From assembly GCF_021869535.1 (NCBI RefSeq), contig NW_026262581.1:33356001-33420000 (forward strand): a DNA stretch of 64,000 nucleotides. The letters run 5' to 3'. The position numbers and the translations under genes were made by a program. Within the stretch, counting starts at the first letter, position 1; every line of letters begins with the position of its first letter. The stretch comes from Mytilus californianus (lineage: Eukaryota). Below the pieces are notes generated by a model, which had not been told where the DNA came from, ran no database searches, and saw only the letters and a list, made by a program, of their open reading frames with translations. Shown one piece after another: positions 14,001-46,568 of this stretch.

Positions 14001-15229
14001 CTGTAACGTAAAATGACGTAAAATAACAAATGGTGTATATCTGCAGCAAGTTTGGTCAAAATTTTACATGGTTTTTGGACGACCTGCAGTTTAAGCTGTC
14101 AGCGAATATTTACTTCAATCCTTGTTTTGGATTTTTCATCTTTTTTTATTTCGTTTCTTTTTCTTAATTATTAACAAAAACGCCTAGTCATAAACTCTTA
14201 AAATTTCATATTAAATTGAGGTTATTTTACTTCTCAGGAATGAACAGAAAAGATTTAACTTAACACTATTTACATCTAAGATCGGTCCTTATTGTGCATA
14301 GCCTGGCATACTGACCCAATATAATACTTCGTCGATAGGCTGCGAGCAGTGAGCCAGAATCCCAGGCTATATTGAGCACAGTTGGCATCATTTCAATTCA
14401 TTTGTTTGATTATCACTTGGACTGCACTATAATCATTCACATGCTGGCGTGGCATTTTATTTAAAATACCACTGCTAACGACAATAGGAACTCGGTCAGT
14501 CTCGTCGTGAGAACGAGTTGCCAAGACTACGATCTATACTTTGAATTTATTGATTTTTAAATAAAGCATCTTTTTCCAATGACATTTTTAAACGTAGCGT
14601 AGACATAAACATATGAAGATAATGTCTCTCTACATATATAGATTGGTTTATTGTTATTTGTTTAACATCCAGTGAAAAATGTTTCGTGCATACAAGGGAA
14701 CAGAACAAATTAACAATTACTAGTACTCCATAAGTAAAGTTATGCAAAGTAGGTCGATCGGGATGAAGGGTCGGAATTTCGACTGTCACAGGAAATTGAA
14801 GGTATATTTAATAACGTCAGAAATTTTGCCCTGCAATAGCCAGACCCTTCAAAGTGTTGTTGTATGGGTTCTTAAACGTGCAAAGAGTGTTGCATTTGCC
14901 CCATACAAGGATTCAGAACTAATGGGCCTTTTCCGACCGGATGTGGCTGCAGATTTATCCATCCCGCTCACCCAAACACACGCCTCTCTTAAGTAACGGT
15001 TTTACTACCAGAAGGCAAAAGGCGTGTGAAGACCGTGTTTTATACCCTAGTCAACCCTTTTGGAGATTTGTCTCTAAGCAGAAATAAATGTAGGCCTTGG
15101 TGCGATTGTATTTACTATATATATGTACGTTGTATTAAGGAAATTATAAAAGAAAAGGAATGTGAACGACTGTACACTACAGCGCGATATATGATTTACA
15201 GTACAAAACAAATATTTACATCTACTCAC

Positions 15230-15310
15230 ATGAAAGCTGTGTTTGTGTCAATTCGGGACAGTGAACAAACACAACATAATCGGATGCTTGCCTAAAGTAC
15301 TTTAGGTACC
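15230..15310 (-). CDS. USP gene A, exon 2
   Basis: Acceptor ttgtattttcaacag|GG (Trp). Encodes YLKYFRQASDYVVFVHCPELTQTQLS. Donor T|GTGAGT; 81 nt, phase 1-1. Confidence 0.92.
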
Positions 15311-17160
15311 CTGTTGAAAATACAACAATATCAAAATGTCAACTTGTATGTCGTAAATTATAAACTGTTTAAAACCCTTTGAAGTATGAAAGTAGAAAAT
15401 ATCTTGAATCGAAGTTTTATATTGTTTTTCATTATTTCGTATGAGACATATGTTATACACATTCTTTATTTATTTGTTTGGTGGGTCCATGTTCATGTAC
15501 ATGACAATTTTACTTATATACCATTTAATTTTAATAGTATACGATTAGTAACACAATGTCCATATGGTAAATATAATTATAATGTTGCACTTATGTAGTC
15601 GAAGATTTGACTTCGACAGTCTATTCTGGTGACAGTTTGATCGTAGGACGTCTGAGCGCAATTCACATAAAGCGTTCGTTGAGGTTCAAGGGAAATTTGG
15701 TGATTAAAATGTACATTTTCGTGAAGAAAAAACTTGATTTTGTTTTTCAAATTGATCAATTAAAACATAAACCAACTATGTATTGATATACTATATTGAA
15801 TATTTATGATTCTACATCATGTCGATACTGTTTACTTAGATTTTGGCATTGTATTTTGAGCATGGTTATATGCTTTTCTAAGACGGTATATGACGTTTTT
15901 ACACTAAATACCATTGGATGTGTATTGACTGATACATAAGGTTTAGAAAACATGATTTATTTATAAGTTGTAATTAGATTTGTACTAGCTTAAAGTGACT
16001 GCTTAAAGTTTGCTCTTATTGTTTGTTGTTACACCGATATCACAAGTAATGGGAGGATTGGGCGCTCACAACCATGTTGACCCCACCACATTGTTTGTGT
16101 GCATGTCCCAAGTCAGGAGCCTGTTATTCAGGGGTTTGTCGTTGGATCATGTCTGTCTTATATGCTTTTCGTTAGAATAGTTTCACATTTTGTCATTTCG
16201 ATGCCTTTTATAGCTGACTATACGGTATGAGTTTTGTTCATTGTTAAACTGCGGCCGTACGGTGACCTTAAGCTGCTTAATACATCCCGTGACTTCATTT
16301 GGACTTCGGTGGATAGTTATCTCATTGACAATCATACATCTCCGTATTTTTTATAAAGGAAACGAATGATTTATCTCATTCTGCTTGACAACTGATCATG
16401 ACAGTTCTTTCGCGATATTCAGACAGAGACTTGCAGCCCCGTGCGTTCTCTGTGAACGACGATCTGATGTACCAAAGTCACAGGAAGTCCTGAAAGGCCG
16501 TCAAACCTGGACTAATACAAGCAATTTTTCATATGGTGCCCAGGTCCCTTAAATGCTGTTTTTTTTTTTTTTTAATTTGGCTGAAAGGCAGAAATTGTTT
16601 TCTTCGTAAAGATATATAGACCATCTTATGCGTTTATTTTATCTTGATTAGTGTTGTAAGGGAAATAATTCGTACATTTTATTAACATCGACCAAAAGTG
16701 TAATCAGTTTTATGTGAACCGTGTATGTGTATTCAGGCTGATTGGTAAAATACATCCATTCAAATGCATTTTATCAAACCTTTTTCGCCTTTTTGGAAAG
16801 CATATAATTATCAAAATGAATGTATTTAAATAATCACAATGTTATGCTGAAATTTTAAGTCCGCAAACAGTAGAGAAATATAAGAATTACATACATTGTA
16901 CATTTCTATACACTTTCAAGTTACATTAAACCAGAAGAATAAATTGACACGGATGGACTTCTGCTTGTAATACATCTGTTCTTCAATAAGACCAAACTGG
17001 TCAAACATGGACTCGAGAACAAATGCAAATGTGCAAGAAGATTCAGTCATGCAAGATGAGATTGCATAACTGATTTTAATTGAATGCATTTGCAAAATTA
17101 TATTTCATAAATTAAAATTTTAAGAACTCCATGCATACATTGTACTTGCAGTTAATTTAC

Positions 17161-17230
17161 ATTGATAAGCATGGTCCGAGTGGTCACTCCCGTCCATAGC
17201 CAGTAAAACCGTTCTGCAGTTTTCTTCCAT
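17161..17230 (-). CDS. Universal stress protein (UspA domain) gene A, coding exon 1
   Basis: MEENCRTVLLAMDGSDHSDHAYQ, then T|GTAAAT (phase 1; 70 nt). USP beta1 motif VLLAMDGSDHS. Confidence 0.92.
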
Positions 17231-18478
17231 TATGTTTTCTTTTGTTTACAATACTAATAAATAAGTATCCAAACATACATCTCGAGTCTGAAGTATATAG
17301 TGATGAACGTTTATAGGTTAATCATTATTGTTGTTACGACATTTGTAACCCTGATTGTATGCTAAAAATAAATTGTTCATGTAAGCTACAGCTTATTCAT
17401 TTAACTTATATACAAAGGTTGCCAGAAGACACAAATAACGAGTGCATTGATACGGTTTAATAATGAAACGTAAATCTAAGAAAAAATGAGTTAATCTCAA
17501 AAGTACATCCTGCTAGCATGGTTAGGTTTTATCTCGAAATAAATTTGATAAAAAAGTGATAAAAATATTGTTATTAAAAGGAACATGTAGATGTGGTTTT
17601 ACGCAGAATGTCTTACGTTAAACTCTTACTTTTGGAACTCCCTACGTGTTCCCTTTTTCAATTGCACAAAGCGTGAAGACCTGTGCATAGTACTTTTATT
17701 TATATTCCATTGATTAGGCGTTCAAAAGTCTTCAAGTAATGATTAAATCAATTTATTAAAAATTTTCTTTTTGCTAATTGCTTTTTCGTCTATAATCTGT
17801 AAAAAAAAACTGAGTGTTCCTTTCAAATTACAATGTCATCTCAAATATATCTCCATGAAGAACTGCAGCCACGGTACATTTCTAATACATTTTTGCAAGA
17901 AATAAGGGATCGATTCCGTCCTGCGACTTTTCACACACACACAAATCTCGCGCGTTCTGAAAATGTTCTTTACTAACAAGTATATTAATCTATGGATTTT
18001 TAGCGAAATCAGTCGCACATTTGGTTTTTGAAGTCTTTCTCAAATTGTAAGTTTGTGTATAAAAAACTTTTTTTAACTAATTTTCTTGTATTGCATTATC
18101 TATCAAATTTTTTTTAATTCTATTTATTTTAAATGTAATGTTCCAACTTTAATCTTATAGAGTATCAACGTTAAAGATTTTACCATTTTTGTATTTACGA
18201 TGAATATTTCGGTTGTATTTGAACTTGTTTCTAATGAGAAAACGAATATATCAATATATTGCCATGGAACCAATAAATAACTCTTTCTTTGAAAAAAAGA
18301 CAAATTTATAAGTTTTTGTCCTTTTTATCTTTTTATAAATTCTTTTTCTAAAAGTTCAGACTTGTCAATATAAGAAGTGGTCGGATAATTAATCTATTAA
18401 GGCATTCATTGAGCAATTAGAAAACAATTTAATTGATAACATCCGTGTGAGGAGATCGGAGGAGCAGCACAGCATGGG

Positions 18479-19504
18479 ATGGGTCGACGCTTTGGACAAT
18501 TTATGACTTTAGAAACAATGGGTGTTTGTCACTATATCTGTTTGACCGCTGTATCATTTCACAAGTTGCTATCTCTTTCTGAACTGACCATGGCCGAAAA
18601 TTCTGCTCTTAGTCCAAATCAAAATCTAGAGAATGATGATTTTGGACCGATAGATTTAACCAAAGATTCTAATGACAATAGCAGTGATACTGACAACGTG
18701 ATCGTAAGACGAAAACGAAAGCCAAAGAAATTTGAAAATTTATCTGAAATCGCCATCGAAGAAAGGAGGAATACTGCAAACGTTCAAGAAAGAAAGCGCA
18801 TGAAGAAGTTATCGAAAGCTCTTGAAGATCTCCGAAAGTGTATACCGGCCGAATATCATGTAACCAACCGCAAAATGTCAAAAATTCGGACACTTAAATT
18901 AGCTGTTAACTATATTGCTTCTTTAACAGATATCATTGACAGAGACAATTTGTTAAAACAACAAGCCTTCCATCTTGAAAGTCAGATGCTACATTCGACC
19001 TATTCTTATTTGATGCCTTCGCCCGTTGGAGTTCAACACGGTAACCTTTCCACTGTGCAACAGTCAGGATTTTCGCCGTATCACACGCCTTGTATTAGTT
19101 CCGAACACAGTAGACTGCCGAAACGACATTTAAATTTCTCGCCTTTTTTTGGAACACCAATTCCGTCGATGATTTCGCAGGGAAGACAATTGACATATCA
19201 GACTCCGGTGAAATCAGAACCAACTCCGTATAGGAATCCAGAAATGATCACAAGACGTCGTACAAGTACTTTTTCGTCTCCGTCCTTTATTGGTGATCTG
19301 AGAAATATGAATGAAGTAAATACAAGTTTTCTCAGCCCAATGGCAGATGACAGTGATGTGGGTTCTGGACCTTCACGTTCAACCGATGCAAATCAGTATA
19401 CATACACGTTAGACGGTATAAGTCCAATTCCAGAAGAGGAGAATTTCCGAGGAGGGACAGACTGTGTGTTTGATCCAAGACGAAGACTCAAGAAAACAGA
19501 ATAA
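18479..19504 (+). CDS. Class A bHLH transcription factor, Mesp/mesogenin-like, single coding exon
   Basis: 341-aa ORF; the better start context is accATGG at 18590 (304 aa). bHLH at about 18764-18937: RRNTANVQERKRMKKLSKALEDLRKCIPAEYHVTNRKMSKIRTLKLAVNYIASLTDII. Helix 1 LxxALxxLR and the PxxY-x5-(M/L)(S/T)KI loop resemble Mesp/Msgn1. Family call is by eye. Confidence 0.9.
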   Translation: MGRRFGQFMTLETMGVCHYICLTAVSFHKLLSLSELTMAENSALSPNQNLENDDFGPIDLTKDSNDNSSDTDNVIVRRKRKPKKFENLSEIAIEERRNTANVQERKRMKKLSKALEDLRKCIPAEYHVTNRKMSKIRTLKLAVNYIASLTDIIDRDNLLKQQAFHLESQMLHSTYSYLMPSPVGVQHGNLSTVQQSGFSPYHTPCISSEHSRLPKRHLNFSPFFGTPIPSMISQGRQLTYQTPVKSEPTPYRNPEMITRRRTSTFSSPSFIGDLRNMNEVNTSFLSPMADDSDVGSGPSRSTDANQYTYTLDGISPIPEEENFRGGTDCVFDPRRRLKKTE

Positions 19505-25715: not shown

Positions 25716-26090
25716 CTAACTATGCGTCGATTCTGTGTCGTATCTTGCACTCTTTGGTGTAGGAGGAGGAGTGTTAGCTTCCGGTACAAAATAGTCATTT
25801 CCATCTGAGTAATTACTGTCATTTTTATCAATTATACGCATCATTGGTCTTAAATCTGGAACTGATTCCGGTCGCAAAATATAGTCACTTCCCTCGTTTT
25901 CTGACAGTGTTGTGTATTGCCTTTCCATTTTATGTCGTTGAAAATTAGAAAGACCATCGTATCCGGGTTTTGGAGAATCCATTGCAATGGAAAACACAGA
26001 TGCATCATGTTCACCAGTCGGATCATTTTCTAAACCGTATGTCACGTTTTGATTTTCATGCTGCCCTAATTTGAGCTTAACATACCTTGC
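25716..26090 (-). CDS. Orphan single-pass receptor, terminal exon (Tyr-rich cytoplasmic tail)
   Basis: Acceptor aatttattttcag|GCA, phase 0. 124 aa, ARYVKLKLGQHENQNVTYGLEND...ARYDTESTHS*, extending the 109-aa track ORF. Confidence 0.85.
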   Translation of the reverse strand, partial: ARYVKLKLGQHENQNVTYGLENDPTGEHDASVFSIAMDSPKPGYDGLSNFQRHKMERQYTTLSENEGSDYILRPESVPDLRPMMRIIDKNDSNYSDGNDYFVPEANTPPPTPKSARYDTESTHS

Positions 26091-26196
26091 CTGAAAATAA
26101 ATTATATCATCTGGATTTGTACGTCGGTAAATACTAATGCCTTTAATTCAAACCAGTAAATTATATGTGTATGACAAGCTGTAAGCTAATTCTGTA

Positions 26197-26360
26197 CATA
26201 GGCGGATACAGGGGGTGGGGCTGAGGGGCCCGGCCCCCCCTTTTGTGTGAAAAATTTGGTTGATTATATAGGGAATCACTGAAGCATGACTGGGGCGCCC
26301 CCTCCCCCCTTTAGGTCAGTCAGTGGGCCCCCCTTACAAAAAGTTCTGGATCCGCCACTG
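26197..26360. mobile_element. GC-rich MITE with CA..TG termini and 5-bp TSD (CTGTA)
   Basis: TIR CATAGGCGGATACAG / CTGGATCCGCCACTG, CTGTA on both sides. A related inverted copy lies near 41660-41790. Confidence 0.8.
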
Positions 26361-27717
26361 CTGTAGATGTCATTTGGTTGTGTGTGCGTTAAATCGATGT
26401 TTCGCATTTCATTTTATTCAAACTGATTCTGTTTTATTTTAGAAAAATATGCGTAAGGAGAGGTTACTCTAAAACATCACTATTTGTTATCTGCCAACAA
26501 AATTATCATCAGATAATTCAAACTAAGGTTTTCAGATCAAATAAATAGTATCGTTAGCCTTAAAAGGGGAAACACCCCTTATAAAATAGTTTCCCTTATC
26601 ATGGACGTTTTTTTAATTGTGGAATGATTTGTCTTTTCGTCGATTTTCTTTTGATGCCACGGTTTTGTCAGTCTCTCTTCGATGTATGTACTTTGATTTT
26701 CTCTTTGTATCTTCCGCCTCTACTAGTATTCTGTGGATTATTTAATTTGCGTTATAATAATTGATTAGCGAATATAGGGCTATATTTTGTACCTTTTTTC
26801 AATTTAAAACCAATTCTTTGTTATTTAAATCATAAAGTATGGTTTACTTTTCAAGTTCCTCCCTGTAAACAAATACTAACTTTAATTTTCAATAAATTCA
26901 TCAAGAACTATAATTCTTTTATGATATTTATACATTGTCGGAAAATATGATTTTTTTTTATGTGTACGAGCTTCATAAACAGGACAAAAGCGTGAAAAAT
27001 TGTATATTTCCGACAATGTACATATATTGTTTTTGTCCTGCAATTTACATAAGGCAATTTAAGGTTTAGTTGTTTAATTCTAAATAGTTGTCTCTTATTT
27101 TTTTCAAAGAAATCGACATAGTTAAAAGGCGGACCGCGAAGAGGACCCCAAATTGATCTGTCACACACAAACAATATTCAGATACCGTCTGCTCAATATG
27201 GAAGCGGAATAACAGGAGAATTTATTTGTACAAATACAAATAAAGCAAACAATTATTTGTGTACCTGTTATTTGTGGCCGATAACATGGTAATGCCTTTT
27301 GTGGCATTAATAGCCAGGTACCTGTATGGTTACTTCAAAAAGATTTGGTGGTACATTTTTGTATCTAATTTCCTTCAACATGAAAATTTAACATATAACA
27401 ATAACATTGTGAATTTTTGAAATAGCCATAAAGATTTCATTCTGAGTCTATTTGCAGATAGTTAGGTATTCACAATTTGCCAAAAAAATGTACTTTTGAA
27501 CCATCTTGGTAACAAGTGTGAAGAAATACACCATAATGTTTAAAAAAATCATAAACGCATGCATGCAAGCCTAAAATTGTGATACCTTGAATTTTAGTAA
27601 AGATGGAGAGACCTTTTGAAAGCGACCCTAGATATAGAAAATAGTTATGTTGATCATTAATCAGATAACGAAAATGCAATGGTATTTCAAAACGCAGTGT
27701 AAAATTTATACACATAC

Positions 27718-27808
27718 TTGGTCTGGATCCATAACCTCACGAATTTCAGCATAGTCAACCGAGCCTCTGTGTTCCAAATTATAGGCTGCGTTATCATTTT
27801 CAGCAGTC
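27718..27808 (-). CDS. Orphan receptor, cytoplasmic exon
   Basis: Acceptor tttatatttttag|G, donor CAA|GTATGT; 91 nt, phase 2-0. Encodes TAENDNAAYNLEHRGSVDYAEIREVMDPDQ and exactly reconciles the phases of the flanking exons. Confidence 0.88.
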
Positions 27809-28824
27809 CTAAAAATATAAACAAAATTCTAAAAAGGGGAGATAAACCAAGGGAAAAAACAATGCACAAGTCGAAGAAAAAAACAGTAATCTAAAACACC
27901 ATTGTAAAAAGGAAAAAAAAGCATAGGCAAGCAACAGTTCAAACACTACATATACTACTCAGATTGAGTCACATGAATCCAACCAAAACCTTGGGTCGAA
28001 CGTGAGTGCTCCGGAAGGGTAATCAAACCCACTAGTTACAATCCTCGTATTAATCATATCAAAATCCGTTAATGAAATATATTCCGTGATAAACTCTAGC
28101 TATTTATTGCCTTTTTGTTGAACTTGATGCTTTGAGGGCAGCTATTTGATAGCTATCAATAGTTCGTCTAGTCTAGCAGAGAATATGTTGATGTGATGCT
28201 GTCTCAGTTTATAAACACATGTATATCTCACATACCCCTTTAATTTACTGATTACTTATAGTTTAGAAAATTGTTACCTGTCTCCCGTACGATATACCTA
28301 TAGGTCGATGATGAAAATTATGAAAAGTGGGGACTTAGAGGGATTGGATGTCCTGCTTATAGACTCTTTCATTTTAGATGCTCCAAAACATTTCACGTTA
28401 TTGGCTCATCAATCAGTTGCTGCCAGGTATATTCCAGATAGACGTGTAGAAAAAGAAAAGGTTTGTGCGCACATAGAATTGGATAAACCCCGCATCATTT
28501 TGTGCATGTTCCAAGTCAGGATATATGGACAGTGAGTTAATTGCTCGATTTTGTTTGTCTCTGGGGTTTTTTTTCGGAGCAGTTGGTTTATGTGGTCTGA
28601 TGTACCGTCCAGTATTTTTTGTGATTTCTGCATGTGCTATCTTTTTATAAATTGTCATGTGTATACATAGGCAAATCAGAAAAATATCTGACAGCGTCAG
28701 CGCATACATTTATTACACAACTAAAAAAGGATAAAGTCGAGGTGTCGAGGTTGGATTCTTTTTTTTTTGCTATAGTAGTCTCTTTCTATAATAAAGTATA
28801 TTATTTCGTTTTACCTATAATTTC

Positions 28825-28955
28825 GACCAAATACTTCAAATTTTGAATATTGATATATAATTAACCTTTGACCAAATACTTCAAATGCTGAATATTGAAA
28901 ACCTTTGACCAAATACTTCAAATTTTCAATATTGAAAACCTTTGACCAAATACTT
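28825..28955. repeat. About 37-bp tandem repeat, 3-4 copies
   Basis: GACCAAATACTTCAAATTTTCAATATTGAAAACCTTT units in an intron of the receptor gene. Confidence 0.85.
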
Positions 28956-29072
28956 GAAAACATCATTTGATTATTAGCATCAGTTTTTTTTTGTATAGTT
29001 TGAGATTGGTTTTCGATTGTTACAACATTATAGAACTGAAACCAATATTAACCATTGTGGTTGAATAGTTAC

Positions 29073-29241
29073 CCCTTTCCAATCAGTTTCCTCTTGGACC
29101 TCCAGTAAACGAACAGTAAAGAAAGAATTAATACAACGACGAGTACAGCTCCCACACATCCGCCAATAATGTCACCATTATCATTTCTGGTGTTCTGTTG
29201 AAGAGCTGGAGTTGTACTTTCCCATGTAAAGTCATCTGTAA
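29073..29241 (-). CDS. Orphan receptor, stalk + transmembrane exon
   Basis: TDDFTWESTTPALQQNTRNDNGD-IIGGCVGAVLVVVLILSLLFVYW-RSKRKLIGK: a 23-aa hydrophobic helix followed by a basic stop-transfer. Donor GG|GTAACT, phase 1-2. An alternative acceptor lies 6 nt downstream (start 29235). Confidence 0.9.
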
Positions 29242-30302
29242 CTAAATAACATTGCTGGTCTTTTCAATAATAACACACAGAACAAATTAAAATGTACGGT
29301 CATAGTTCAATTGGTAAGAGCGGGGAACCTCCCCTCCCCACTTTACAAGTCCTTGATCCAACAGCAAAATTAAAGAATCAATTTAAACTTCAAACATACA
29401 TGTACCGATGGGGTTATTTTAGAAATGCGTTTCAAATTTCAGATAGTTTGTGATCACATAAATAGGAAATCCGTGATAACAAATTGGAGAAACCGCTATA
29501 AGAAATGGTAGAATTACGAATGTAAAATCAATAACAATCATGATGAAGATCAATCAACATTTTACATGAAAATTAACAATATATGCATCCATTGGTTTTC
29601 CCGTTTGAATGGTTTTACACTAGTAATTTTTGGGGCCCTTTATAACTTGCTGTTCGGGTGAGCCAAGGCCCCGTGTTGAAGACCGTACTTTGACCTATAA
29701 TGGTTTACTTTTATAAATTTTGACTTGGATGGAGAGTTGTCTCATTGGCACTCATACCACATCTTCTTATATCTATATCCAGAATACAATTAACACAAAC
29801 ACACTAGAAAAACAACGATTAATTCCACCAGCACAAGACTTCTACGTGATCTGGTCTCTGGTGGAGATTTTTCTCATTGGCAATCTTATTTTTATATTGA
29901 TTTATTACATTTGGTACATTTATAAGCGTTCTTAACTCGAAACCTTTTATGGGTTTAAGTCTTATTTTGTTTATGTTGGCACGTTGTGTTGTTTTTCAAA
30001 CACTCTGTTGGTTCTCAGTCATATAAATAATAGTCTCAGAAATATGTTAATTAGAATCTTATATATGACGGAAAGAACACTAATTTCCAAAATATTCCAA
30101 TAATAATCAAAAGTTTATACACAGACAGACGGACAACAAACTACGCTCACACTATTTAATTGGTGAATTGTTTTATTTAAGATTAAGGGTCTGACTCATC
30201 TCTTTTCTAGTTTATGCCCCTTTTCAATATCAATACAGAAAAAGAAATACTAGTAAGTCATGCTTATAAAACAGGAATGTTATATATAACTAAGGAACCT
30301 AC

Positions 30303-30460
30303 CGTAATCATCGTAATCCTCGTAACACGATCCATTGTATGAGTACTTATCTATTATTACTTGTATATGATGTCCGAACGTCTGTTCGAACATTGACTGG
30401 TATTGGTCACAGAATGTGTTTAAATTTTCCGAAATGCATCCCAGTAGATACTTCGTACTC
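30303..30460 (-). CDS. Orphan receptor, Cys-module exon B
   Basis: Acceptor ttcctgtctcttgttag|G, donor G|GTAGGT; 158 nt, phase 2-1. Encodes STKYLLGCISENLNTFCDQYQSMFEQTFGHHIQVIIDKYSYNGSCYEDYDDY. Confidence 0.87.
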
Positions 30461-31497
30461 CTAACAAGAGACAGGAATAACTAAAGCTACATATATAGTT
30501 ACATTTGTAAGCAATTATTCAGGATAAAATAAAGTGAGATATGAGACGCGAAGACATATAATAACAAACCAAAAAAGAAGGTATGGTAAGGCCATTTTAG
30601 TCCATTGAAGTCGGAAATGAAAACATCTTCTAGATCTTTCAAATAATTATTGATTAAGTGCTGCTTGCTTAATGTCCATTGGCAAATATTTCAAACATAT
30701 TCATAACGAGAACTTATAGATTATTAATATATACAGGTACTGTAGGTTCTGCAAGACATGTCGACCAGGATGAAGGCCGGGGAATTTTGATAGATACCGA
30801 TAACGAGGGTAAACTATGTTAGAAAAGGGCACACATTTTGCCTTTCCAACGGATTATGCCTCAGAGAGTTGTTGCAAATGAACCTCTTTAACGTGCACAA
30901 TACGTTGCACTCTAAATTAACGTGGCAGATACTACGTCATATTCCAAGCAGACATGCATCCCACACAGCCAATTGCAAACGGATTCCCGTCCTTAGCAAG
31001 AGTTCTACTTTCGGACGAGATAAGTCCATCAGATGACCATATTCATATATTCAAGTCAGCGCTTGCCTCCTTTATGTATTAGCAAAACACAGGTCTGTAA
31101 GATACTAGTACTGAATAAAATACTAGTATTTTAAAAATTTTATCAGATACTTTACTTGCTATATCGGCATTAAAATTTCTTGAAATATTGGGAAAATAGA
31201 TTTTTAAGCATTAGCCTTACAGGCAGCAATATTTTGGCAGAAAATATCATAAGCTAATTATCGCTATCAAATCTTCCTTCAAAAACTATATTGGTCACAG
31301 ATGTCCCTATCACAGATTTTCATTAAAAATTTGGTCAAAGAAAAGGCGAGAGTTTTTACAAGGAAAAAGGGTTCTTATAAACTTCTTACATAATGACTAC
31401 ATTGCTAAGCACTAACATGTTGACATGAGTAAAATATCGCTAAAAGGTAAGAAGAATTTTACTATTTCATCAAATCACGGGGTCTAATCATGTATAT

Positions 31498-33703
31498 TAC
31501 GGAAGCGTATTAGCGCCACACAATTTTTATTTTATAATTTTCTTCCTATCAGTTTGTGATATAACGCAAACCTTTGCGAAATAACGCAAACCTTTGCGTT
31601 ATAACGCAAACCTTTTGATTTCAATTATTCATTAAGTTTTGTATATACATCTGTATGTCCGTCTGTCATTAAATTTCTGTTGTGATTTAGTTAGGAAAAA
31701 GAACCATAAATACAAGGCAAAGTCATTATAATAAATATGAATTGGAATCAGAAAAGTATATAATTTAACAAGAAAATAAATATGCTATAGGCATATTTTA
31801 TTTGAAAGGCCAACATTTTTAAAATTTTGATTAAGTAGATAAGAGCAAAAGTAATGTTATACAATTGTAAAACTGTCAAGTCAAATAGACAAAATAATCT
31901 TTCTGCTGTAAAATGAATTATCAAGAAAGAATTTTTTTTTTTAATTTTGATGTAAGAAATCGTTTTTTAAAATCTCAGAATATGATAAAGATTCTTTGAT
32001 AAAAAGTCATGAAATTTTCAATTTAGTGTGGTAACTTGGAAGCAATTTAAATGGAGAGAACATAATTTTATTAATAAAACATCTTCATTTTATTCATTAA
32101 TGCAAAAGGGTAGTTAACCAACCTTACACAATCCTCAAACGAGAACTTACTTTGGAAGTGTATTTATATTCGGCTATAGCTATATTAGCAGGGTTGTTTT
32201 TTTTTCTTCGGTGTAACTTTAATTTACTCAATTTTCATTATATTAATATATGTACATGTATTATCATGTATACCATTTTGGGGGCACTTTATAGCTTGAT
32301 GTTCGGTGTGAGCCAATGTTCCGTGTTGAAGACCGTACTTTGACCTATAATGGTTTACTTTTACCAATTATGACTTAGATGGAGAGATTTCTCATCGGCA
32401 CTCATACCGCATCTTCTTATATCTATTATCCTGCTCATTATTAGTTAAATAGTAAAGCATTTTACTTTGCAATGAGTACAAAGAAGATACATTTATATAT
32501 GCAGCCTCCTCCATTAATAACTGCTGCTTCCTTTGAATCTTAAATAAGAAATAAGATAAAACAAATGTTTGCGTTATATCGCAAAGGTTTGCGTTGTAAT
32601 AATAATAATAATAATAATATCTTTATTTAGAGAGAGTAACTTATTTGGATTACACCAATTTTCAATACGGCTCTCTTAATACAATAATAATTACATTAAA
32701 TATAAACAATACATATTCAATAATAATGATAAATAAAGATGTAATACAATTTAAATACAATAAACAATTATTATATATGGCATTACAGTACAAATATCAT
32801 GGTAATGTTAAAAGTGCATAGATTCGTAGTTATGTTTAAATTTTAATACTGTGTTTGATTTTTTAATTGAATTAGGAAGAGCATTCCATACTTTTGGTCC
32901 ATTGTACGAGAAACTTGACTTATACAACTCTGTATTTGGTTTTGGAATTATAAAATTATATGAGGACGAAAATCTCGTATTGTATTTTTAGTTTGCAGAA
33001 GCTGATAAAATAAGACTGGGCATACATTCTGGAGCTAAGCCATGTTTTGCCTTATACATTGGTAATGATTTATGATAATGTATTCTTTGTGTAATCGGCA
33101 CTATGTTACATTCGTTAAATAATTCGCTTGAAGGTTTGGTGTAATCATGTTCGTCTAAAATTATTCTTGCTGCCCTTTTTTGCAGTTTTAGTAAACTATC
33201 TGATAGAAAGTTATTACAGTTTCCCCATATTGAACAACAATAATCTAAGTGAGGTAAAACGTAAGCGTTGTAGAACATTTGTCTAGTTTTGTGATTTAAA
33301 TATTTCTTTATCCTTTTTAGTAAAGCTAAAGAAGAGTTAACTCTTTTTATGATATAATCAATATGAGAAGACTAAGATAGAGATGCATCAACAAAAATAC
33401 CTAGAACCTTTTCACATGTACTTTCTTTAATTTGTTGTCCATTCATAGCAATATTAATGTTTTCATTTGATGGAGCTGAAAGCTTCTGTTTAGAGCCAAA
33501 ACATATAGCCTTCGTTTTAGATACATTTACAGCCATTTTATTATTTTAAAATGTTTGCGTTATTTCGCAAACGTTTGCGTTGTAACGCAAAGGTTTGCGT
33601 TATTTTTGCAAATATTTGCGTTATAACGCAAAAGGTTTGCGTCATAACGCAAACGTAGGAAGAAATATAAAAAAAAGTTGTGTGGCGCTAATACGCTTCC
33701 GTA
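31498..33703. mobile_element. Non-autonomous TIR transposon, TAC..GTA termini, 6-bp TSD (IS3EU-like)
   Basis: TIR TACGGAAGCGTATTAGCGCCACACAA at both ends; GTATAT at 31492-31497 and 33704-33709; subterminal ATAACGCAAACCTTTGCG arrays. Confidence 0.85.
32598..33540 (-). mobile_element. 5'-truncated CR1/L2-type LINE (RT C-terminal part, pseudogenised) with (TTA)n tail
   Basis: KMAVNVSKTKAICFGSKQK...EKVLGIFVDASLS*SSHIDYI...YNAYVLPHLDYCCSIWG...LQKRAARIIL, then after a frameshift KSSFSYNGPKVWNALP. One in-frame stop; (AAT)n on the plus strand at 32598-32618. Confidence 0.92.
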
Positions 33704-33772
33704 GTATATCGTGGCACAATTGAGTCTTTTGTTGTTATACAATTCAGATCCTCATATATAGCTATGACCTAC

Positions 33773-33887
33773 CAACAAATATCATCATCTCTGGTGAGTG
33801 CATTTACATCATGATATATTTCTGGATAAAAAGTCATATCCATACATGTTAACGCCTCCAAACAACACCATGTAGCTGTATATGAGT
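33773..33887 (-). CDS. Orphan receptor, Cys-module exon A
   Basis: Acceptor atttctttattctag|AC, donor TG|GTAGGT; 115 nt, phase 1-2. Encodes SYTATWCCLEALTCMDMTFYPEIYHDVNALTRDDDIC(W). Confidence 0.85.
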
Positions 33888-34371
33888 CTAGAATAAAGAA
33901 ATATAATAATAAAATCCCCCTAATCTTAAAATCACATATGATTTTCACTAGCCAAGACTGCCGAAGAAGATACCCGATTTGTGGATCGTCCATTGATTGT
34001 TGCATTTTGGTCAGAACTTTTTTTTAAATTTGAATAACATATATTAACATAATCCATTCAAAGAGTGTTATTTTCTATTCATTTGTAGAAGTAGTTTAAC
34101 ACATTTTTCTTATCTCTTTATCCATTTAAGTGTGCTTTAATTTGTAAATAGTTTGTCAGTTTATAGATAATAATGTTACAATATGAAGTCAACCAAATTC
34201 AAGTTCAAGATCAACATCAACATTTCAATTAGTTTCTAACTTATTGACTAAGGATGTGATTTGTTCCTTAGAACATTTGATAAAATGTATTAGTCCTATC
34301 GTGCGTTATAAGTTTTGAATAAAAGTAGGAATTTCAAAATATTCAATCTGTTGTCAGTATAAAAATAAGAA

Positions 34372-34720
34372 AACGTGATATGATTGCCAATGAGACAACT
34401 CTCCACAAGAGACCAAATGACTTAGAAATTAACAACTATAGGTCACCATACGGCCTTCAACAATGATTAAAACCTATCCCGCCTAAGTCAACTATAAAAG
34501 GCCCCGAAATTTGCTCATAATAACTCTACTTATCATGCTTATGAAATTCATATTTCAATTTCCTTTAATTTCGGGACCTTTTATAGCTTGCTATGCAGTA
34601 TTGGTTTGCTAATTGTTGAAGGCCGTACGGTAACCTAAAGTTATCAACTTCTACGTTATTTGGTCCCTGATGGAGATGGCTTATTGGCTCTCAAACCACA
34701 CCTTCTTAATTCTATATAGG
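34372..34720. mobile_element. Tail-to-tail pair of the most abundant interspersed element in the window
   Basis: ATGATTGCCAATGAGACAACTCTCCACAAGAGACCAAATGAC...GGTCACCATACGGCCTTCAACAATG...TATAAAAGGCCCCGA followed by its inverted copy. Further copies near 1130-1290, 6590-6670, 7000-7225, 11045-11135, 16040-16350, 24900-25220, 29600-29770, 32270-32430, 50630-50720 and 55890-56030. Confidence 0.85.
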
Positions 34721-35093
34721 AACGAATTTTATAAAAAATCTAATTTGAATTTAGTACAATTTGTAGATTTCATGCAAGTCATAACTCTATCACATTTTAA
34801 AAAGTCAAAAAGAACTTCATCTTCTCACCTCCTGATGAAACATGTACATGCAACCCGACTACAAGACTTTTATATGGTTACGGATGCGTACTGAATTATA
34901 TTATTTTGAAAAATGAACCCTTTGAAGAAGTGATCGACCGGAGAACGAAGACTTTTGGCCACACAAATAATGTTGAACTAAGTCCTTTCTTAAACTTAAA
35001 TATAAGTTAAACGATAAAATTAAGTAAAAAACTTAATGTTGTTGCAAATAATAAAAAAAGTAATTGAAAAAAGATATCTCTTTAAAGTCTTAC

Positions 35094-35187
35094 CGTTATA
35101 AAACCATGCACATGCAACCTCCGAATTAGAAAGAAATTCCAAAGCTTTAATCACGGTTTCGTTACCATACATCTTTTTAAGAATACT
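35094..35187 (-). CDS. Candidate upstream exon of the orphan receptor
   Basis: Strong donor G|GTAAGA in the needed phase 1. Open frame ILKKMYGNETVIKALEFLSNSEVACAWFYN after ctaac...aaaatag, or from an ATG at 35172. No signal peptide, so the 5' end stays unresolved. Confidence 0.45.
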
Positions 35188-36550
35188 ATTTTATAAAATG
35201 TTAGCTTTAATTTCAATTAAAACCATAGCCCAAAACCGACAATAAAAAGATAAAATGATTTAATAAGATTGTATCAAAATTTTTCACTTATCAACGTCAT
35301 AAATCAATTGTTGTTCTGTGCGGTCAAGCGTTACCGTGCTGGTCTGTTGTTTAAAGTGAAATCAAGAAGGCTGTACTTGAATAATATGTATCCTGGTTAA
35401 AATGGACTATTGAGTTTGAATTATATTGATAACGTTTCACGGGATATTTGACTTTTCTTATTTTTGAAAGCTTCGGGCATTTTAAATACTTTTACATGTT
35501 TATTCATACCTTCCGAATTGGTCCATCGCCAAATCCTATACGCGCAGTATAAAAACACCGTTGAAAATTCGTCATTTGATTTGAATTAAAGATAAATAAC
35601 ATTGCAAGGCTCGCAAATCGTACCCATTATTGAGTATGAACAAGTGTATTAAAATGTGCGTTATTGATAGGCTTATTCCTTATTTGTTGTTAAACTTTTA
35701 AAGTTTCCAACAGTCATGTTTAGGTTTGAAGAACCATATCGTTTGATGGTGTCAGCATTGACGTTACAGATTATTTTTTGTTCATATTGGAACTATTTCA
35801 TTATGGAATCAGTGGACAGAGTTTAAAATGGCTTTCCAATTTAACATTAATTTGAGAGGTATTATGCTCAGACAATTTTACGTTTTCTGGAGAAGAAACA
35901 TGAGCAAGATTATATCATTATTACTTGAAAAGATTTTAGTTTCAAAGGTAAAACCAAAAAAAAAAACAAAGGAAAACCGTATTTCAAGTTTGGGTTGAAA
36001 AATGTTCCAGAAGGAAATAATCTATGAGTTTGATTAAGTGATTCAAAATTATGGCTCATACATAGACAATATGAAAGGCAGCTTTTTTAAATTTGCATCT
36101 CATTTATTTTTATTGACAAATTTGATTTAGTAAATGAGGAAACACGTCGCTTTGAAACCGTGACCATTTCTTTTATGATGCAGCTTTGGCACTTGATTAT
36201 GAAACAGTTTGTGTAACTGAATATAGTGGCAACAATAGGACTTGTTCTGACATGTAAATTTGTACAGGTTTTGAGATATTGTCTAAAATCGTAAAAAAAA
36301 GATCGGAAATGTCGGAGAAAACGTAAACAAAAGAAGTATTTCAAATGTAGTCAGATGAGTCATGTACGAGTAAAATGTCATCAAAAGGTGGTAAAAGTCA
36401 ATATTGATGCTCAAAAGTCTGCTGCTTCCGGTAGTATTTATAAGTTTTCAGAAGCGGAAGTTTTGATTTTTTTACGATTAAGAAGGACTGGCATACTGAA
36501 AAATACAATCACTGACCTTACTGCATTTTCTAAAGGTTTTATTTCATTGT

Positions 36551-36552
<2 letters not shown>

Positions 36553-36597
<45 letters not shown>
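36553..36597. repeat. (TG)n microsatellite
   Basis: About 22 TG units. Confidence 0.98.
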
Positions 36598-36603
<6 letters not shown>

Positions 36604-43585: not shown

Positions 43586-46568
43586 TGTACTTAATTGTTA
43601 TTTCATGGATCGAATTGAAAGAAAAATGGAGGTTCATTAAAGATGAAGGATCATGAAAGAGGAGGGATCATGAAAGAGGAAGGATCATGAAAGAGGAGGG
43701 GTCATGAACATTCACAAAAATAGTTTAAACCTGTAATATACAAATACTTGTGTTAAAATAGGGAGATGTGGTATGATTGCTAATTGGCAACTATATCCCA
43801 CCAGAGACCAAAATAATGTGAATGTAAAAGTCCATGATAGAGTTGTGTGTCTGTTCCAAAGCAGGAACCTCGACAGCTGCTGTTTTTATCAATTTTTTAT
43901 TTAGAATTTTCATGGTCGGTCTTTGATCGTCTCTATTGTTAGAGTTCACAAGGTGTTTAGCCGAAGGGCGATTATGAGGTTAATATCAGATAGACATAAT
44001 CGGCTATTGATGAATACTTATTTTCAATCTATAGATGGTTTTCTTGTTGTTGAATCGTATGTCCTTGTTGATACACACCCTTCATCTCCCTTTGATGATA
44101 CACAAATTCATGTTTAATTTATCTTAGATACTGACTGAATTGTTTGTTTTATACCCCCACCATCGTCAACCACCCTGCTCGCTCTCTGTATAGCATTGAA
44201 AGTGTTCGTCATTCCGTTCTCCCTTCCTATAATCTTTTGTACCCTATACTACTTCTAAACCGCATTTTGCATAGCATTATCCAAATAACTTTAAGGGTTT
44301 ATTTTTGCATGACATGTACTTTGTCATATCCACACACTACAGTAATTAATTGAATCCGCGTCTCCTCTTTTAACTCCCAATAACAATTAACTGAAACTTT
44401 CTAACAAGCCTTATCATATAATGCCATCGTGCTCCTCTTTTTTTGTTTTTTGATCCGAATTATTTTTGAGGATTTCCAATCACGAGTTTAGGTCTTTAAA
44501 GTGATTAGGTGCTATTTTGTGAGCATTCTCTTTAGTTATGTATGCGATTGATTCTAACAAATTGATACAGCTTACACTTCCGGAGCACCTGAGATCAACC
44601 CCGTTTTTTTGGTGGGGTTCGTGTTGCTCAGTCTTTAAGATTTCTATGTTGTATTTGTGTTTTATATATTGTTTTTTTGTCTTTTCGTCGTTTTTCGTTT
44701 TTTGCCATGGCATTGTCAGTTTGTTTTCGACTTATGAGTTTGAACGTCTCTTTGGTATCTTTCGCCTCTCTTTTGACCTGCAGTGTAATATCCGATAGAA
44801 CATGTTTCATTGAGTAATTTTAAAAAGCATGGAAAAATCCATACATATTAGTTTTTTCAAATTTTGTTTTCGAAAAGATCAATTCAATGATTTCTTAAAA
44901 AAGCTGTCCGTGTTGAATTGTTCAGAAAGCATTTTTTTTTTAGAAAAGTAATGTCAATAATATAACACTTTGTTAGTTTGCTAATTTTTGTGCTAGCAAA
45001 TCCTAATTCATGTCTTTGGTTTTTTTTTTTTTTTTGGTTTTTTATTAAAGTTTGTATAAAACCAATTTCAATAGGTAGGAAACCAATATATAGGAACAAA
45101 TTATATTGAAGTGACCTGGTGATAGCTGCGGGATCTACAAATGTACATCTATAGTGTGCATAAAAGGGTTTTGCTTGATAGAAAAGTTGATAAAATATAC
45201 AAGCCCTGGGAAATCCTTTTTAGGAAAATAATTATAGTGAATATATATAGTCCAGATAAAACTTTAAAGTCGCATGAACAAACTATGTGAAACAGACTTG
45301 TGGACAGAGCCAGCTTCTGTTGAAATAGACATGCATTATCCGTCACGTGATTTTATTCATATTCAGAAGACAGAGACGATCACAGGTATTTGCTTTCCAA
45401 AAAGCTTGTCTAAATATAGCATCTTTAGATTTTAAACACAAGTTCGTTTGTAAGTGTTAGTTTAGCATATATTTGTAACTTCAGTTAAGGTGGGCTTACA
45501 TTGATCTTTCTAATTTGGTTGTTATTGTCATGTTACGTTACGAAAATTAAAAATATGAAATATGGAATCTAGGTAAATATATGATTTACAACAGATACCT
45601 GTGAAATAATGGAATTTACTGAAATATGATATTGGAGATGTCCTTTCGGTTCATTAGTTGTTTTTGTCATGCTTATCTCTGTTGGTTATTTTTTCATTTA
45701 TCGTATAACATTAGATGATATTTCTTTGTAAACTTTTAGAAGATTATGTTAGACAAACTCTGTTCCTATTTTGACATTAACCACAAAAAGTTTACTTCGT
45801 TGAACAATCGGTATTTCCGTGTTTTATTTGAAGGGGATAAAGTAATTAAATGGTCACATTGTACTATTTCTATTATTTCATTTGGTAATATCAAGTCAAT
45901 ATAGTGCTACTACAAGTGGTTTTATTTTTGTTCATCAGTCACTTAAAACGAAAACAAACCAAAAACAAATACAAATTCTCGAAGGAGCATTTTTTTTCAA
46001 TTTTAAGGATATTTGTAACAGACTGAGTGTTAAAAGTAGTTTAAATTATAAATAGATTCTTTAATGATCAAAGTCCAATATGTTTACCAATTTTTGATTA
46101 CAGAAACATATACAGGTAAATTGGCCAACTGTATTTATTTGGAACAAAACATCTAGCTGATTTAGGATATAGAGTTTATTAACACTTTTACTAAAAGACA
46201 TTGAATTCTTACAATTCTTTCAAACAACATAAACAAAAAACCTAGGTGCATTGTGCATGTAAACATAATAAAATCGATAGTTAGAACTAATATCATAGTT
46301 GTATATAATAGTCAATATGTTTCATACGTATTCTTTAACTCTTGTAAATCTATTTTTACGTATAAAACTTTTATATAAAATAAGGGAAGTAATTGTAAAT
46401 TCGAAAGGTATGATGCTTCATTTTTCATCTCGAAAGTGATGATTTCATGAAATAAATAATGAATTTGTTATTTAATTTCCTTTGATACATTTGCAATCGG
46501 TTGATTCACAAATAGCATGAAATACATAGAATTACCTGCAAACTTCAAAATACTTTCAATACCCAAAA

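What the first reader, a model, noticed from the sequence alone, without database searches (positions are those of the whole stretch)
25716..35187. Unrecognised single-pass receptor: Cys-rich ectodomain, TM helix and Tyr-rich tail
Seen: five exons join with consistent phases (1-2, 2-1, 1-2, 2-0, 0-stop) and canonical splice sites into ...DSYTATWCCLEALTC...DDDICWSTKYLLGCISENLNTFCDQY...NGSCYEDYDDY, then a stalk, a TM helix and a 164-aa tail. Most of it is invisible in the ORF track. I cannot match the ectodomain to Ig, EGF, SRCR, CUB, lectin or LRR patterns; it looks helical and disulfide-bonded, loosely like DUF19/T20D4.11-type domains (inference). It is a candidate for an undescribed bivalve signalling or immune receptor.
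Basis: partly seen in the sequence, partly recalled or inferred. Interest (0 to 1): 0.8.

Follow-up and report, generated by a model that had tools for sequence, protein, structure and literature searches.

The report
Mussel orphan membrane protein, ITIM/ITAM tail
This is a real, conserved but uncharacterised mussel gene for a single-pass membrane protein whose outer domain has eight invariant cysteines and matches no known family, and whose inner tail carries conserved tyrosine motifs like those of immune receptors; its function has not been tested.

Summary
On the minus strand, five exons (33887-33773, 30460-30303, 29241-29073, 27808-27718, 26090-25716) join with GT..AG sites and the stated phases. 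Their product is identical to RefSeq XP_052081142.1 (Mytilus californianus LOC127719157, "uncharacterized"). One RNA contig confirms the 33773|30460 junction.

I add a first coding exon (ATG 35172 to 35094). It begins the 333-aa models of M. edulis, M. trossulus and M. galloprovincialis, and is 79/79 nt identical to M. edulis. A syntenic ortholog about 48% identical, on unnamed metagenome contigs, has the same six exons and phases.

The protein is 328 aa:
- no signal peptide;
- an acidic 141-aa N-domain with eight invariant Cys and three invariant N-glycosylation sequons;
- one TM helix followed by basic residues;
- a 164-aa tail with invariant VDYxxI (ITIM) and YDGL-x11-YTTL (long-spaced ITAM).

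dN/dS against M. edulis is 0.24.

Pfam, PDB sequences, ESM Atlas and two AlphaFold runs (pLDDT about 40) give no family or fold, and DUF19 is not matched. No paralog was found in the genome, and no relative outside these mussel loci.

Best reading is a type III (N-out) membrane glycoprotein that signals through phosphotyrosine, as a receptor or adaptor. An immune role is inferred only. The scan's earlier notes concern this same stretch, not other DNA.

The parts
35094..35172 (-). Exon 1, coding part. ATG at 35172-35170 encodes MYGNETVIKALEFLSNSEVACAWFYN plus one base of the next codon. It carries the conserved NET sequon and Cys21.
   Evidence: The donor is ACG|gtaaga, with an in-frame TAA at 35193-35191. 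It is the start of the M. edulis, M. trossulus and M. galloprovincialis 333-aa models. It is 79/79 nt identical to M. edulis. Homologous Met-started exons exist in L019 and L020. No RNA reads were seen on it in M. californianus.
35186..35464 (-). Conserved 5' flank, a putative 5'UTR or promoter (inferred).
   Evidence: It aligns to M. edulis at about 75-83% and the homology then ends. Part of it (35189-35353) also resembles a dispersed repeat. The AG at 35187-35186 follows an A-rich tract and is absent from the M. edulis duplicate L007.
33773..33887 (-). Exon 2 (phase 1 to 2), encoding DSYTATWCCLEALTC...TRDDDIC(W). It holds Cys34, 35, 41 and 64 and the N26-D-S sequon.
   Evidence: Splice sites are. 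The RNA contig joint 33773|30460 is. It is 110/115 nt identical to M. edulis.
30303..30460 (-). Exon 3 (phase 2 to 1), encoding STKYLLGCISENLNTFCDQY...DKYSYNGSCYEDYDDY. It holds Cys73, 82 and 110 and the N107-G-S sequon.
   Evidence: An X1 contig covers 30319-30459 and joins it to exon 2. It is unique in the genome.
29073..29241 (-). Exon 4 (phase 1 to 2), encoding the stalk, the TM helix and the basic stop-transfer RSKRK.
   Evidence: The acceptor at 29241 is fixed by RefSeq isoform X2, which joins exon 2 to exon 4.
29102..29170 (-). Transmembrane helix, residues 142-164 (IIGGCVGAVLVVVLILSLLFVYW).
   Evidence: Kyte-Doolittle 19-residue maximum is 2.94 at residue 142, and it is the only such segment. 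The 15-aa flank charge is -1 on the N side and +4 on the C side.
27718..27808 (-). Exon 5 (phase 2 to 0), encoding TAENDNAAYNLEHRGSVDYAEIREVMDPDQ.
   Evidence: The homologous exon with the same phases occurs in L003, L019 and L020.
27742..27759 (-). ITIM match VDYAEI (residues 191-196).
   Evidence: Regex found it in all six orthologs, as VDYAEI or VDYDVI. The block HRGSVDY is invariant.
25716..26090 (-). Exon 6 (phase 0 to stop), 124 codons plus TAG.
   Evidence: It is unique in the genome.
25905..25961 (-). Long-spaced ITAM-like pair YDGL-x11-YTTL (residues 248-266). It lies inside the invariant block SPKP.YDGLSNF.R..MERQYTTLS.
   Evidence: See the alignments and the regex. In shuffles of the tail, 3% have such a pair and 1.5% have both an ITIM and an ITAM.

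Best explanation
This is a functional six-exon gene, LOC127719157 of Mytilus californianus. On present evidence its orthologs are confined to mytilid-type mussels. It encodes a 328-aa single-pass membrane glycoprotein with no cleavable signal peptide. The TM helix (142-164) probably acts as a reverse signal-anchor. That would place the acidic 141-aa N-terminal domain outside the cell or in the lumen (type III topology). This domain has eight invariant Cys, three invariant N-x-S/T sequons and probably a helical structure. The 164-aa tail would stay in the cytosol. The tail most likely works as a phosphotyrosine docking scaffold. After the N-domain is engaged, or a partner receptor clusters, Src-type kinases would phosphorylate the invariant tyrosines. 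The ITIM VDYxxI would recruit SH2 phosphatases of the SHP/SHIP type, and the YDGL-x11-YTTL pair would recruit a tandem-SH2 Syk/Shark-type kinase. One chain could therefore both activate and restrain signalling. Shown here: gene structure, conservation, purifying selection, one TM segment, charge asymmetry, motif conservation, and the absence of a signal peptide in all models. Inferred: topology, glycosylation, disulfides, phosphorylation, SH2 partners, and any immune role.
For: Gene reality: the product is identical to the RefSeq models and one junction is spliced in an RNA contig. dN/dS is 0.24 overall (dS 0.26), with the TM at 0.12, the tail at 0.19 and the ecto core at 0.26. Exons are far better conserved than their flanks. 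A distant ortholog about 48% identical has the same six exons and phases and lies beside the same bHLH neighbour; ω is about 0.18 at saturated dS. Topology: there is one hydrophobic segment, and the flanks carry -1 (N side) and +4 (C side). The N-domain has net charge -19, eight Cys invariant across all six sequences, and sequons N4, N26 and N107 invariant. Start codon: four annotations begin at the same Met. An in-frame stop lies upstream. No conserved upstream exon was found between this gene and the divergent neighbour. Tail: ITIM and YxxL-x11-YxxL are invariant in blocks that are otherwise among the best conserved parts of the protein. The x6-12 ITAM consensus is the one used for Draper, whose ITAM binds the Syk-like kinase Shark (PMC6219719). 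ITIM-bearing receptors are reported in a bivalve, the oyster NCAM1 homolog (PMC11841013 abstract).
Against: No signal peptide means that a 141-aa Cys-rich domain must be translocated by the TM segment alone, which is unusual for such a long domain. Exon 1 has no RNA support in M. californianus, and the RefSeq model of this species starts at Met42. Expression is very low in the runs examined. Neither AlphaFold run gave a confident fold (pLDDT 40 and 37), so the helical, disulfide-bonded description is weak. The x11 spacing is outside the strict x6-8 ITAM. All four YxxΦ motifs could equally be AP-adaptor sorting signals. ITIM-like strings occur in 26% of shuffled tails. RefSeq also predicts isoforms that lack exon 3 (M. 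californianus X2) or exons 3-4 including the TM (M. galloprovincialis X2). Nothing ties the gene to haemocytes or infection.
Confidence: 0.5

Rival explanations
1. It is a classical type I receptor whose signal-peptide exon has been missed by all annotations, or whose N-terminus acts as a weak cleavable signal peptide. Function would be as in the best explanation.
For: Eight invariant Cys and three invariant sequons argue for passage into the ER. In the distant ortholog, residues 6-15 (TVLAALYFLL) are fairly hydrophobic, with KD 2.38. RNA coverage of the 5' end is nil in M. californianus.
Against: The Mytilus N-terminus is not hydrophobic (KD 1.2, interrupted by K and E). An in-frame TAA lies 21 nt upstream of the ATG. 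The AG at 35187 has an A-rich tract and is lost in the L007 duplicate. L019 and L020 have no AG within about 35 nt upstream of the conserved ATG. No conserved upstream block lies between the gene and its divergent neighbour. The conserved NET sequon at residues 4-6 would be lost if the N-terminus were cleaved.
Confidence: 0.15
2. It is a trafficking or cargo membrane protein of the secretory or endocytic pathway. Its conserved YxxΦ motifs (YAEI, YVKL, YDGL, YTTL) would be AP-complex sorting signals, not SH2 docking sites, and the protein would have no immunoreceptor-type signalling.
For: All the conserved Tyr motifs fit the YxxΦ pattern. The tail is acidic (net -8), as in many sorting tails. 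There is no evidence of phosphorylation and no SH2-related neighbour.
Against: Conservation extends well beyond the four-residue YxxΦ cores. The blocks HRGSVDY and SPKP.YDGLSNF.R..MERQYTTLS are invariant over about 48% overall identity. The residue at -2 of the ITIM and the exact 11-residue spacing are both kept. Neither feature is required by AP binding.
Confidence: 0.2
3. It is a transmembrane adaptor in the manner of vertebrate LAT, SIT or PAG. It would have no ligand of its own and would be a type III membrane scaffold phosphorylated downstream of other receptors. The N-domain would mediate association with partners.
For: Type III topology without a signal peptide and a long tail with many Tyr motifs are the hallmarks of those adaptors (established knowledge). 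There is a weak, sub-threshold Pfam similarity of the TM/juxtamembrane region to SIT (E 0.12, 13.4 bits against a cut-off of 27.6). Predicted isoforms retain the tail while dropping ectodomain exons.
Against: The N-domain is 141 aa and under purifying selection with eight invariant Cys, unlike the very short ectodomains of the known adaptors. There is no juxtamembrane CxxC palmitoylation motif in Mytilus. The SIT hit is not significant.
Confidence: 0.12
4. It is not a functional gene, but a chance ORF chain, a pseudogene or an annotation artefact.
For: Expression is very low, no family is known, and M. edulis has a frameshifted partial duplicate (P0013/L007).
Against: dN/dS is 0.24. The reading frame is intact across six exons in six sequences from at least five species-level sources, including one at about 48% identity. 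Synteny is conserved. A spliced RNA contig exists. Exons are much better conserved than introns.
Confidence: 0.03

Closest known systems
RefSeq LOC127719157 (XP_052081142.1 and XP_052081149.1, M. californianus) and its 333-aa orthologs XP_071126539.1 and CAG2237016.1 (M. edulis), XP_063424868.1 (M. trossulus), XP_076112275.1 and VDI53454.1 (M. galloprovincialis)
   Same: This is the same gene. The window product is identical to XP_052081142.1 from Met42 onward, and 83-88% identical to the other Mytilus proteins.
   Different: All are labelled uncharacterized or hypothetical. One carries an automatic name 'SDK', which nothing here supports. The M. californianus model lacks exon 1, the first 41 residues.
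ITIM/ITAM immunoreceptors, e.g. Drosophila Draper (ITAM YxxI/L-x6-12-YxxI/L binding Shark; PMC6219719) and the oyster NCAM1 homolog with two ITIMs (PMC11841013)
   Same: It is a single-pass membrane protein with a cytosolic tail carrying an ITIM consensus and a long-spaced YxxL pair, both conserved among orthologs.
   Different: The ectodomain is not Ig, EGF, FN3 or lectin, and there is no signal peptide. ITIM and ITAM-like motifs sit on the same chain. No phosphorylation or SH2 binding has been shown. There is no sequence homology to any of these receptors.
Vertebrate transmembrane adaptor proteins (LAT, SIT, PAG/Cbp, LAX, TRIM)
   Same: It shares the type III topology without a signal peptide and the long Tyr-motif tail. 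SIT also carries an ITIM (established knowledge).
   Different: It has a 141-aa conserved Cys-rich N-domain instead of a very short one, and no palmitoylation CxxC. The Pfam SIT match is below threshold.
Pro-neuregulin-1-type membrane proteins that export a sizeable N-terminal domain without an N-terminal signal peptide (established knowledge, recalled, not tested)
   Same: They are a precedent for translocating a folded, disulfide-containing N-domain using only an internal TM segment.
   Different: There is no sequence or domain similarity. This is an analogy of biogenesis only.
DUF19 / T20D4.11-like nematode Cys-rich domains
   Same: Both are Cys-containing, putatively helical extracellular modules.
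   Different: No Pfam hit appears even at E<=10 for any piece or for the whole N-domain. The Cys spacing C-x12-CC-x5-C-x22-C-x8-C-x8-C-x27-C was not matched to any model.

Membership tests
ITIM-bearing inhibitory receptors | [S/I/V/L]-x-Y-x-x-[I/V/L] in the cytoplasmic tail | tested here: met
   VDYAEI is at residues 191-196, and VDYDVI occurs in the distant ortholog. It is conserved in 6/6 sequences. The consensus alone occurs in 26% of shuffled tails.
ITIM-bearing inhibitory receptors | Tyr phosphorylation and recruitment of SHP-1/2 or SHIP | not testable with these tools
   This needs biochemistry.
ITIM-bearing inhibitory receptors | Ig-superfamily or C-type-lectin ectodomain behind a signal peptide | tested here: not met
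   No Pfam domain was found. The N-terminus is not signal-peptide-like.
ITAM-bearing activating receptors or adaptors | Strict consensus YxxL/I-x6-8-YxxL/I | tested here: not met
   The spacing is 11 residues (YDGL-x11-YTTL). The Mytilus-only YAEI...YVKL pair has x10-11 spacing.
ITAM-bearing activating receptors or adaptors | Broad consensus YxxL/I-x6-12-YxxL/I, as applied to Draper (PMC6219719) | tested here: met
   YDGL-x11-YTTL is invariant in 6/6 full sequences and in P0002-P0006. It occurs in 3% of shuffled tails.
ITAM-bearing activating receptors or adaptors | Binding of a tandem-SH2 Syk/ZAP-70/Shark kinase | not testable with these tools
   No assay is available. Complex prediction was not used because no partner sequence was in hand.
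DUF19 / T20D4.11-like domain | Match to the Pfam profile | tested here: not met
   hmmscan at E<=10 lists no such family for the exons, P0011, or P0012:1-146.
Type I membrane receptors | Cleavable N-terminal signal peptide | tested here: not met
   The conserved start is MYGNETVIKALEF.., with a best 10-aa KD of 1.2 and an upstream in-frame stop. No upstream conserved exon was found. No dedicated signal-peptide predictor was available, and 5' RNA evidence in this species is missing.
Transmembrane adaptor proteins (LAT/SIT/PAG type) | Type III topology, very short ectodomain, juxtamembrane palmitoylation CxxC, multiple Tyr motifs | tested here: not met
   The type III prediction and the Tyr motifs are met. 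However, the ectodomain is 141 aa and conserved, Mytilus has no CxxC after the TM, and the Pfam SIT hit is E 0.12, below the cut-off.
Mytilus LOC127719157 orthogroup | Full-length collinear similarity, same exon structure, same neighbours | tested here: met
   Synteny with M. edulis is shown. The distant locus shares the bHLH neighbour.

The most novel reading that the evidence does not exclude
The 141-aa N-domain (C-x12-CC-x5-C-x22-C-x8-C-x8-C-x27-C, with the invariant TRDDDICW and DKYxYNGxCYxDY blocks) would be a previously undescribed extracellular fold confined to mytilid mussels. It would be exported without a signal peptide and would serve as the ligand-binding head of a new class of invertebrate immunoreceptor, one that carries both an inhibitory ITIM and an activating long-spaced ITAM on one chain.
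Probability: 0.25. Interest if true: 0.65.

Novelty: new variant of a known kind. Interest (0 to 1): 0.42.

Why it matters
Bivalves lack adaptive immunity and are known for lineage-specific expansions of immune genes. Receptors that signal through ITIM or ITAM are barely characterised in them. This gene offers a compact, single-copy, conserved candidate with three useful features:
- an N-domain of unknown family;
- an unusual biogenesis without a signal peptide;
- a tail whose most conserved blocks are exactly the Tyr motifs.

It would be a tractable entry point for asking whether Syk/SHP-type phosphotyrosine signalling in molluscs uses receptors unrelated to the Ig and lectin families. It also corrects the N-terminus of the M. 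californianus RefSeq model. If the Tyr motifs turn out to be sorting signals, the gene is simply an ordinary orphan membrane protein.

Tried and rejected
**Family and fold searches**
- Pfam on every exon, on P0011, on P0012 and on its halves gave only sub-threshold TM-region noise (Syndecan, EphA2_TM, SIT, DUF5113).
- PDB sequence search with the N-domain and with profile A3 found nothing below E 0.5.
- ESM Atlas feature search gave no usable hit.
- AlphaFold2 on P0011 alone gave pLDDT 40, and on the shallow alignment A2 gave pLDDT 37. I ran no fold search because matches to such models are meaningless.

**Homolog searches**
- The word-index search with the N-domain found only M. edulis proteins.
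- The same search with a 104-aa piece found nothing.
- The exhaustive representative search with the tail profile found 6 hits. Five are pieces of this gene family. The sixth is a 31-residue match at E 5e-6 in a 2694-aa katydid protein, which I take as chance.

**Paralogs and neighbours**
- Own-genome searches with exon 3, exon 6 and P0012:1-120 found only this locus.
- I tested similarity of the N-domain to the Cys modules of the divergent neighbour gene and found none.

**Signal-peptide exon hunt**
- blastn of the 20-kb M. californianus intergenic region against the 6.4-kb M. edulis one showed only dispersed repeats.
- The block at 44570-44766 is a repeat, not an exon.

**RNA**
- Read laying on 30290-36289 showed almost no reads on the gene in raw run X18, so exon 1 usage in this species and the other four junctions are not confirmed by reads.
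- Rfam on the two highly transcribed intronic repeats found nothing at gathering score.

**Other**
- P0013 was first considered a paralog with a different tail. I now read it as a chimeric model of a frameshifted partial duplicate plus the next gene's tail exons.
- Complex prediction was not used because no partner was in hand.

Full report
**What is there**

The window is AT-rich animal DNA (about 32% GC). It is G000:C1:33356001-33420000 of a 1.65-Gb genome, identified as Mytilus californianus through exact protein matches.

Reading the DNA and splicing it by script gives five exons: 33887-33773, 30460-30303, 29241-29073, 27808-27718 and 26090-25716.
- Every acceptor is AG and every donor is GT.
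- The phases are 1-2, 2-1, 1-2, 2-0 and 0-stop, exactly as claimed.
- The tail from RSKRK to the stop is 164 aa.

The exon at 27808 was not obvious from the finding's text.

**Independent support for the model**

- A tail-profile search of 1.84 billion representative proteins returned XP_052081149.1. Its cluster mate is XP_052081142.1, 'uncharacterized protein LOC127719157' isoforms X2 and X1.
- The 287-aa X1 is contained letter for letter in my spliced product.
- X2 joins exon 2 directly to exon 4, which fixes the acceptor at 29241.
- Reads and contigs laid on 30290-36289 gave one 172-nt contig in run X1. It covers exon 3 and skips 3312 bases with CT..AC ends, which is the 33773|30460 junction.
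- Otherwise the gene is almost silent in those runs. The raw RNA run X18 had no reads on exons 1-3.

**The missing 5' end**

The M. californianus RefSeq protein starts at an internal Met in exon 2. The M. edulis ortholog XP_071126539.1 (P0012, 333 aa) starts 41 residues earlier with MYGNETVIKALEFLSNSEVACAWFYN. That peptide is encoded in the window at 35172-35094 with a GTAAGA donor.

The same start is used in the 333-aa models of M. trossulus and M. galloprovincialis and in a second M. edulis annotation. The exon is 79/79 nt identical between M. californianus and M. edulis, whereas its flanks are 63-80% identical.

Several observations indicate that this ATG is the true start:
- An in-frame TAA lies at 35193-35191.
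- The AG at 35187 follows an A-rich tract and is absent from an M. edulis duplicate.
- Between this exon and the divergently transcribed neighbour gene there is no conserved unique block. The neighbour starts at about 55.7 kb in the window. It lies 6.4 kb away in M. edulis and 20 kb away here. Only dispersed repeats align in between.

I conclude that the ATG at 35172 is the start codon and that the protein has 328 residues and no signal peptide. This rests on comparative evidence. In M. californianus itself no run covered exon 1.

**A distant ortholog**

The tail exon has relatives about 45% identical among ORF fragments from ENA, JGI and Logan contigs. Two of them sit on long contigs (L019 from a 662-kb contig, L020 from a 73-kb one).

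Both contigs contain all six exons in order, with the same phases and a Met-started first exon (MEGNETVLAALYFLL..). Both give intact ORFs of 378 and 366 aa. A convergent bHLH gene lies downstream in both. Its ortholog, 65% identical, lies at 18647-19498 on the plus strand of the window, so these loci are orthologous.

Overall identity to the window protein is 48%. It is AT-rich and intron-bearing, and I presume it is another mytilid.

**Selection**

| Comparison | dS | dN | ω |
|---|---|---|---|
| M. californianus vs M. edulis, whole gene | 0.26 | 0.062 | 0.24 |
| same pair, N-domain core | 0.13 | 0.034 | 0.26 |
| same pair, stalk | 0.21 | 0.157 | 0.76 |
| same pair, TM | 0.31 | 0.039 | 0.12 |
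| same pair, tail | 0.36 | 0.069 | 0.19 |
| M. californianus vs distant ortholog (dS saturated) | 2.5 | 0.45 | about 0.18 |

The gene is under purifying selection and is not a pseudogene.

**Anatomy of the protein**

- The N-domain (1-141) has net charge -19 and eight Cys at positions 21, 34, 35, 41, 64, 73, 82 and 110. All eight are invariant in the six aligned sequences.
- Three N-x-S/T sequons (N4, N26, N107) are invariant.
- The blocks TRDDDICW and DKYxYNGxCYxDY are invariant.
- There is one hydrophobic segment (142-164, KD 2.94), with flank charges of -1 on the N side and +4 on the C side. By the positive-inside rule the tail is cytosolic and the N-domain is exoplasmic.
- Without a signal peptide this is a type III (reverse signal-anchor) topology. 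The conserved sequons and cysteines fit an ER-translocated domain, but none of this is shown experimentally.
- In the distant ortholog residues 6-15 are more hydrophobic (KD 2.38), so a weak signal peptide there cannot be excluded.

**The tail**

Its best conserved stretches are AYNL, HRGSVDYxxI (an ITIM consensus), RYV, SVF, SPKP.YDGLSNF.R..MERQYTTLS, YI..PES.P and YF.P.
- YDGL-x11-YTTL fits the broad ITAM consensus YxxI/L-x6-12-YxxI/L used for Drosophila Draper, whose ITAM binds the Syk-like kinase Shark (PMC6219719).
- It does not fit the strict x6-8 form.
- In 20,000 shuffles of the tail, 26% contain an ITIM string, 3% contain an ITAM(6-12) and 1.5% contain both.
- The argument therefore rests on conservation, not on mere occurrence.

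**What the N-domain is**

It remains unknown.
- Pfam finds nothing for any piece or for the whole, and DUF19 is not hit even at E<=10.
- PDB sequences give nothing, either singly or with a profile.
- ESM Atlas features give nothing.
- The word-index searches find only Mytilus proteins.
- Two AlphaFold runs predict helices, but at pLDDT 40 and 37. I made no fold comparison.
- The genome holds no paralog detectable with exon 3, exon 6 or the first 120 residues.
- The N-domain shows no similarity to the neighbour's Cys modules.

**Interpretation**

The gene is real, conserved and already annotated, but uncharacterised. I think it most likely encodes a type III membrane glycoprotein whose tail is a phosphotyrosine scaffold with an inhibitory ITIM and an activating-type long-spaced ITAM (confidence 0.5).

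The main rivals are:
- a missed or weak signal peptide, with the same function (0.15);
- YxxΦ motifs acting as sorting signals in a trafficking protein (0.2);
- a LAT/SIT-like adaptor without its own ligand (0.12).

An immune role is plausible by analogy. ITIM receptors exist in oysters (PMC11841013). No role of this kind has been tested here.

**Novelty**

This is not a new gene, because RefSeq has it in four Mytilus species. It is not a new kind of system either, because single-pass Tyr-motif receptors are common. Three things are new: the unclassified, invariant 8-Cys N-domain; the absence of a signal peptide; and the restriction to mussels. I rate it a new variant of a known kind, of moderate interest.

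Noticed in passing
window 32811-33545 (minus), inside intron 2: A fragment of a non-LTR retrotransposon ORF (C-terminal reverse-transcriptase region, e.g. ...YNAYVLPHLDYCCSIWGNC...), broken into three frames. It is transcribed at low depth on one strand in X18.
   Followed up: no
window 32290-32489 and 34290-34489: Two copies of a short dispersed repeat in opposite orientation (arms 32324-32363 and 34423-34462). They show very high summed RNA/contig depth, in the thousands, with many loose ends, meaning the repeat is embedded in many transcripts elsewhere. No Rfam family reaches gathering score.
   Followed up: partly
window 18647-19498 (+): A bHLH-domain gene convergent with this gene. It is 65% identical to a 303-aa HLH (PF00010) ORF that lies in the same position beside the distant orthologs L019 and L020, so synteny is conserved.
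   Followed up: partly
L007 (M. edulis GCA_905397895.1) 13816-18131; protein P0013: M. edulis carries a partial duplicate of exons 1-4 plus about 4 kb of upstream sequence, on the far side of the neighbour gene. It has frameshifts in exon 2 and in the TM exon. The annotated 343-aa 'unnamed protein product' fuses it to the tail exons of a different gene. M. californianus has no such duplicate.
   Followed up: partly
G000:C1:33424156-33427037 (minus; 68156-71037 in window numbering, just outside the window) and about 33436019-33437182: Two tandem genes whose tail exons carry other Tyr motifs (SSVYEEI, QSYAKL, GEYITP, HMYFVLEKE). They may be a second family of Tyr-motif membrane proteins in the same cluster. 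Their 5' exons were not sought.
   Followed up: partly
window 55674-64000 (+): A divergently transcribed neighbour gene with Cys-containing exons (the scan's finding s1-322426). Its 5' end is syntenic in M. edulis (L004 3364-3706). The intergenic spacer is 20 kb here against 6.4 kb in M. edulis, and is filled with repeats.
   Followed up: partly
RefSeq isoforms P0007 (M. californianus X2) and P0021 (M. galloprovincialis X2): Predicted alternative forms. Skipping of exon 3 shifts the frame, so the model restarts at an out-of-frame ATG in exon 2. Skipping of exons 3+4 stays in frame and removes the TM helix. Neither was tested with reads.
   Followed up: no
window 36539-36600: A (CA)n microsatellite, which appears as THTHTH/CVCVCV ORFs.
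   Followed up: no
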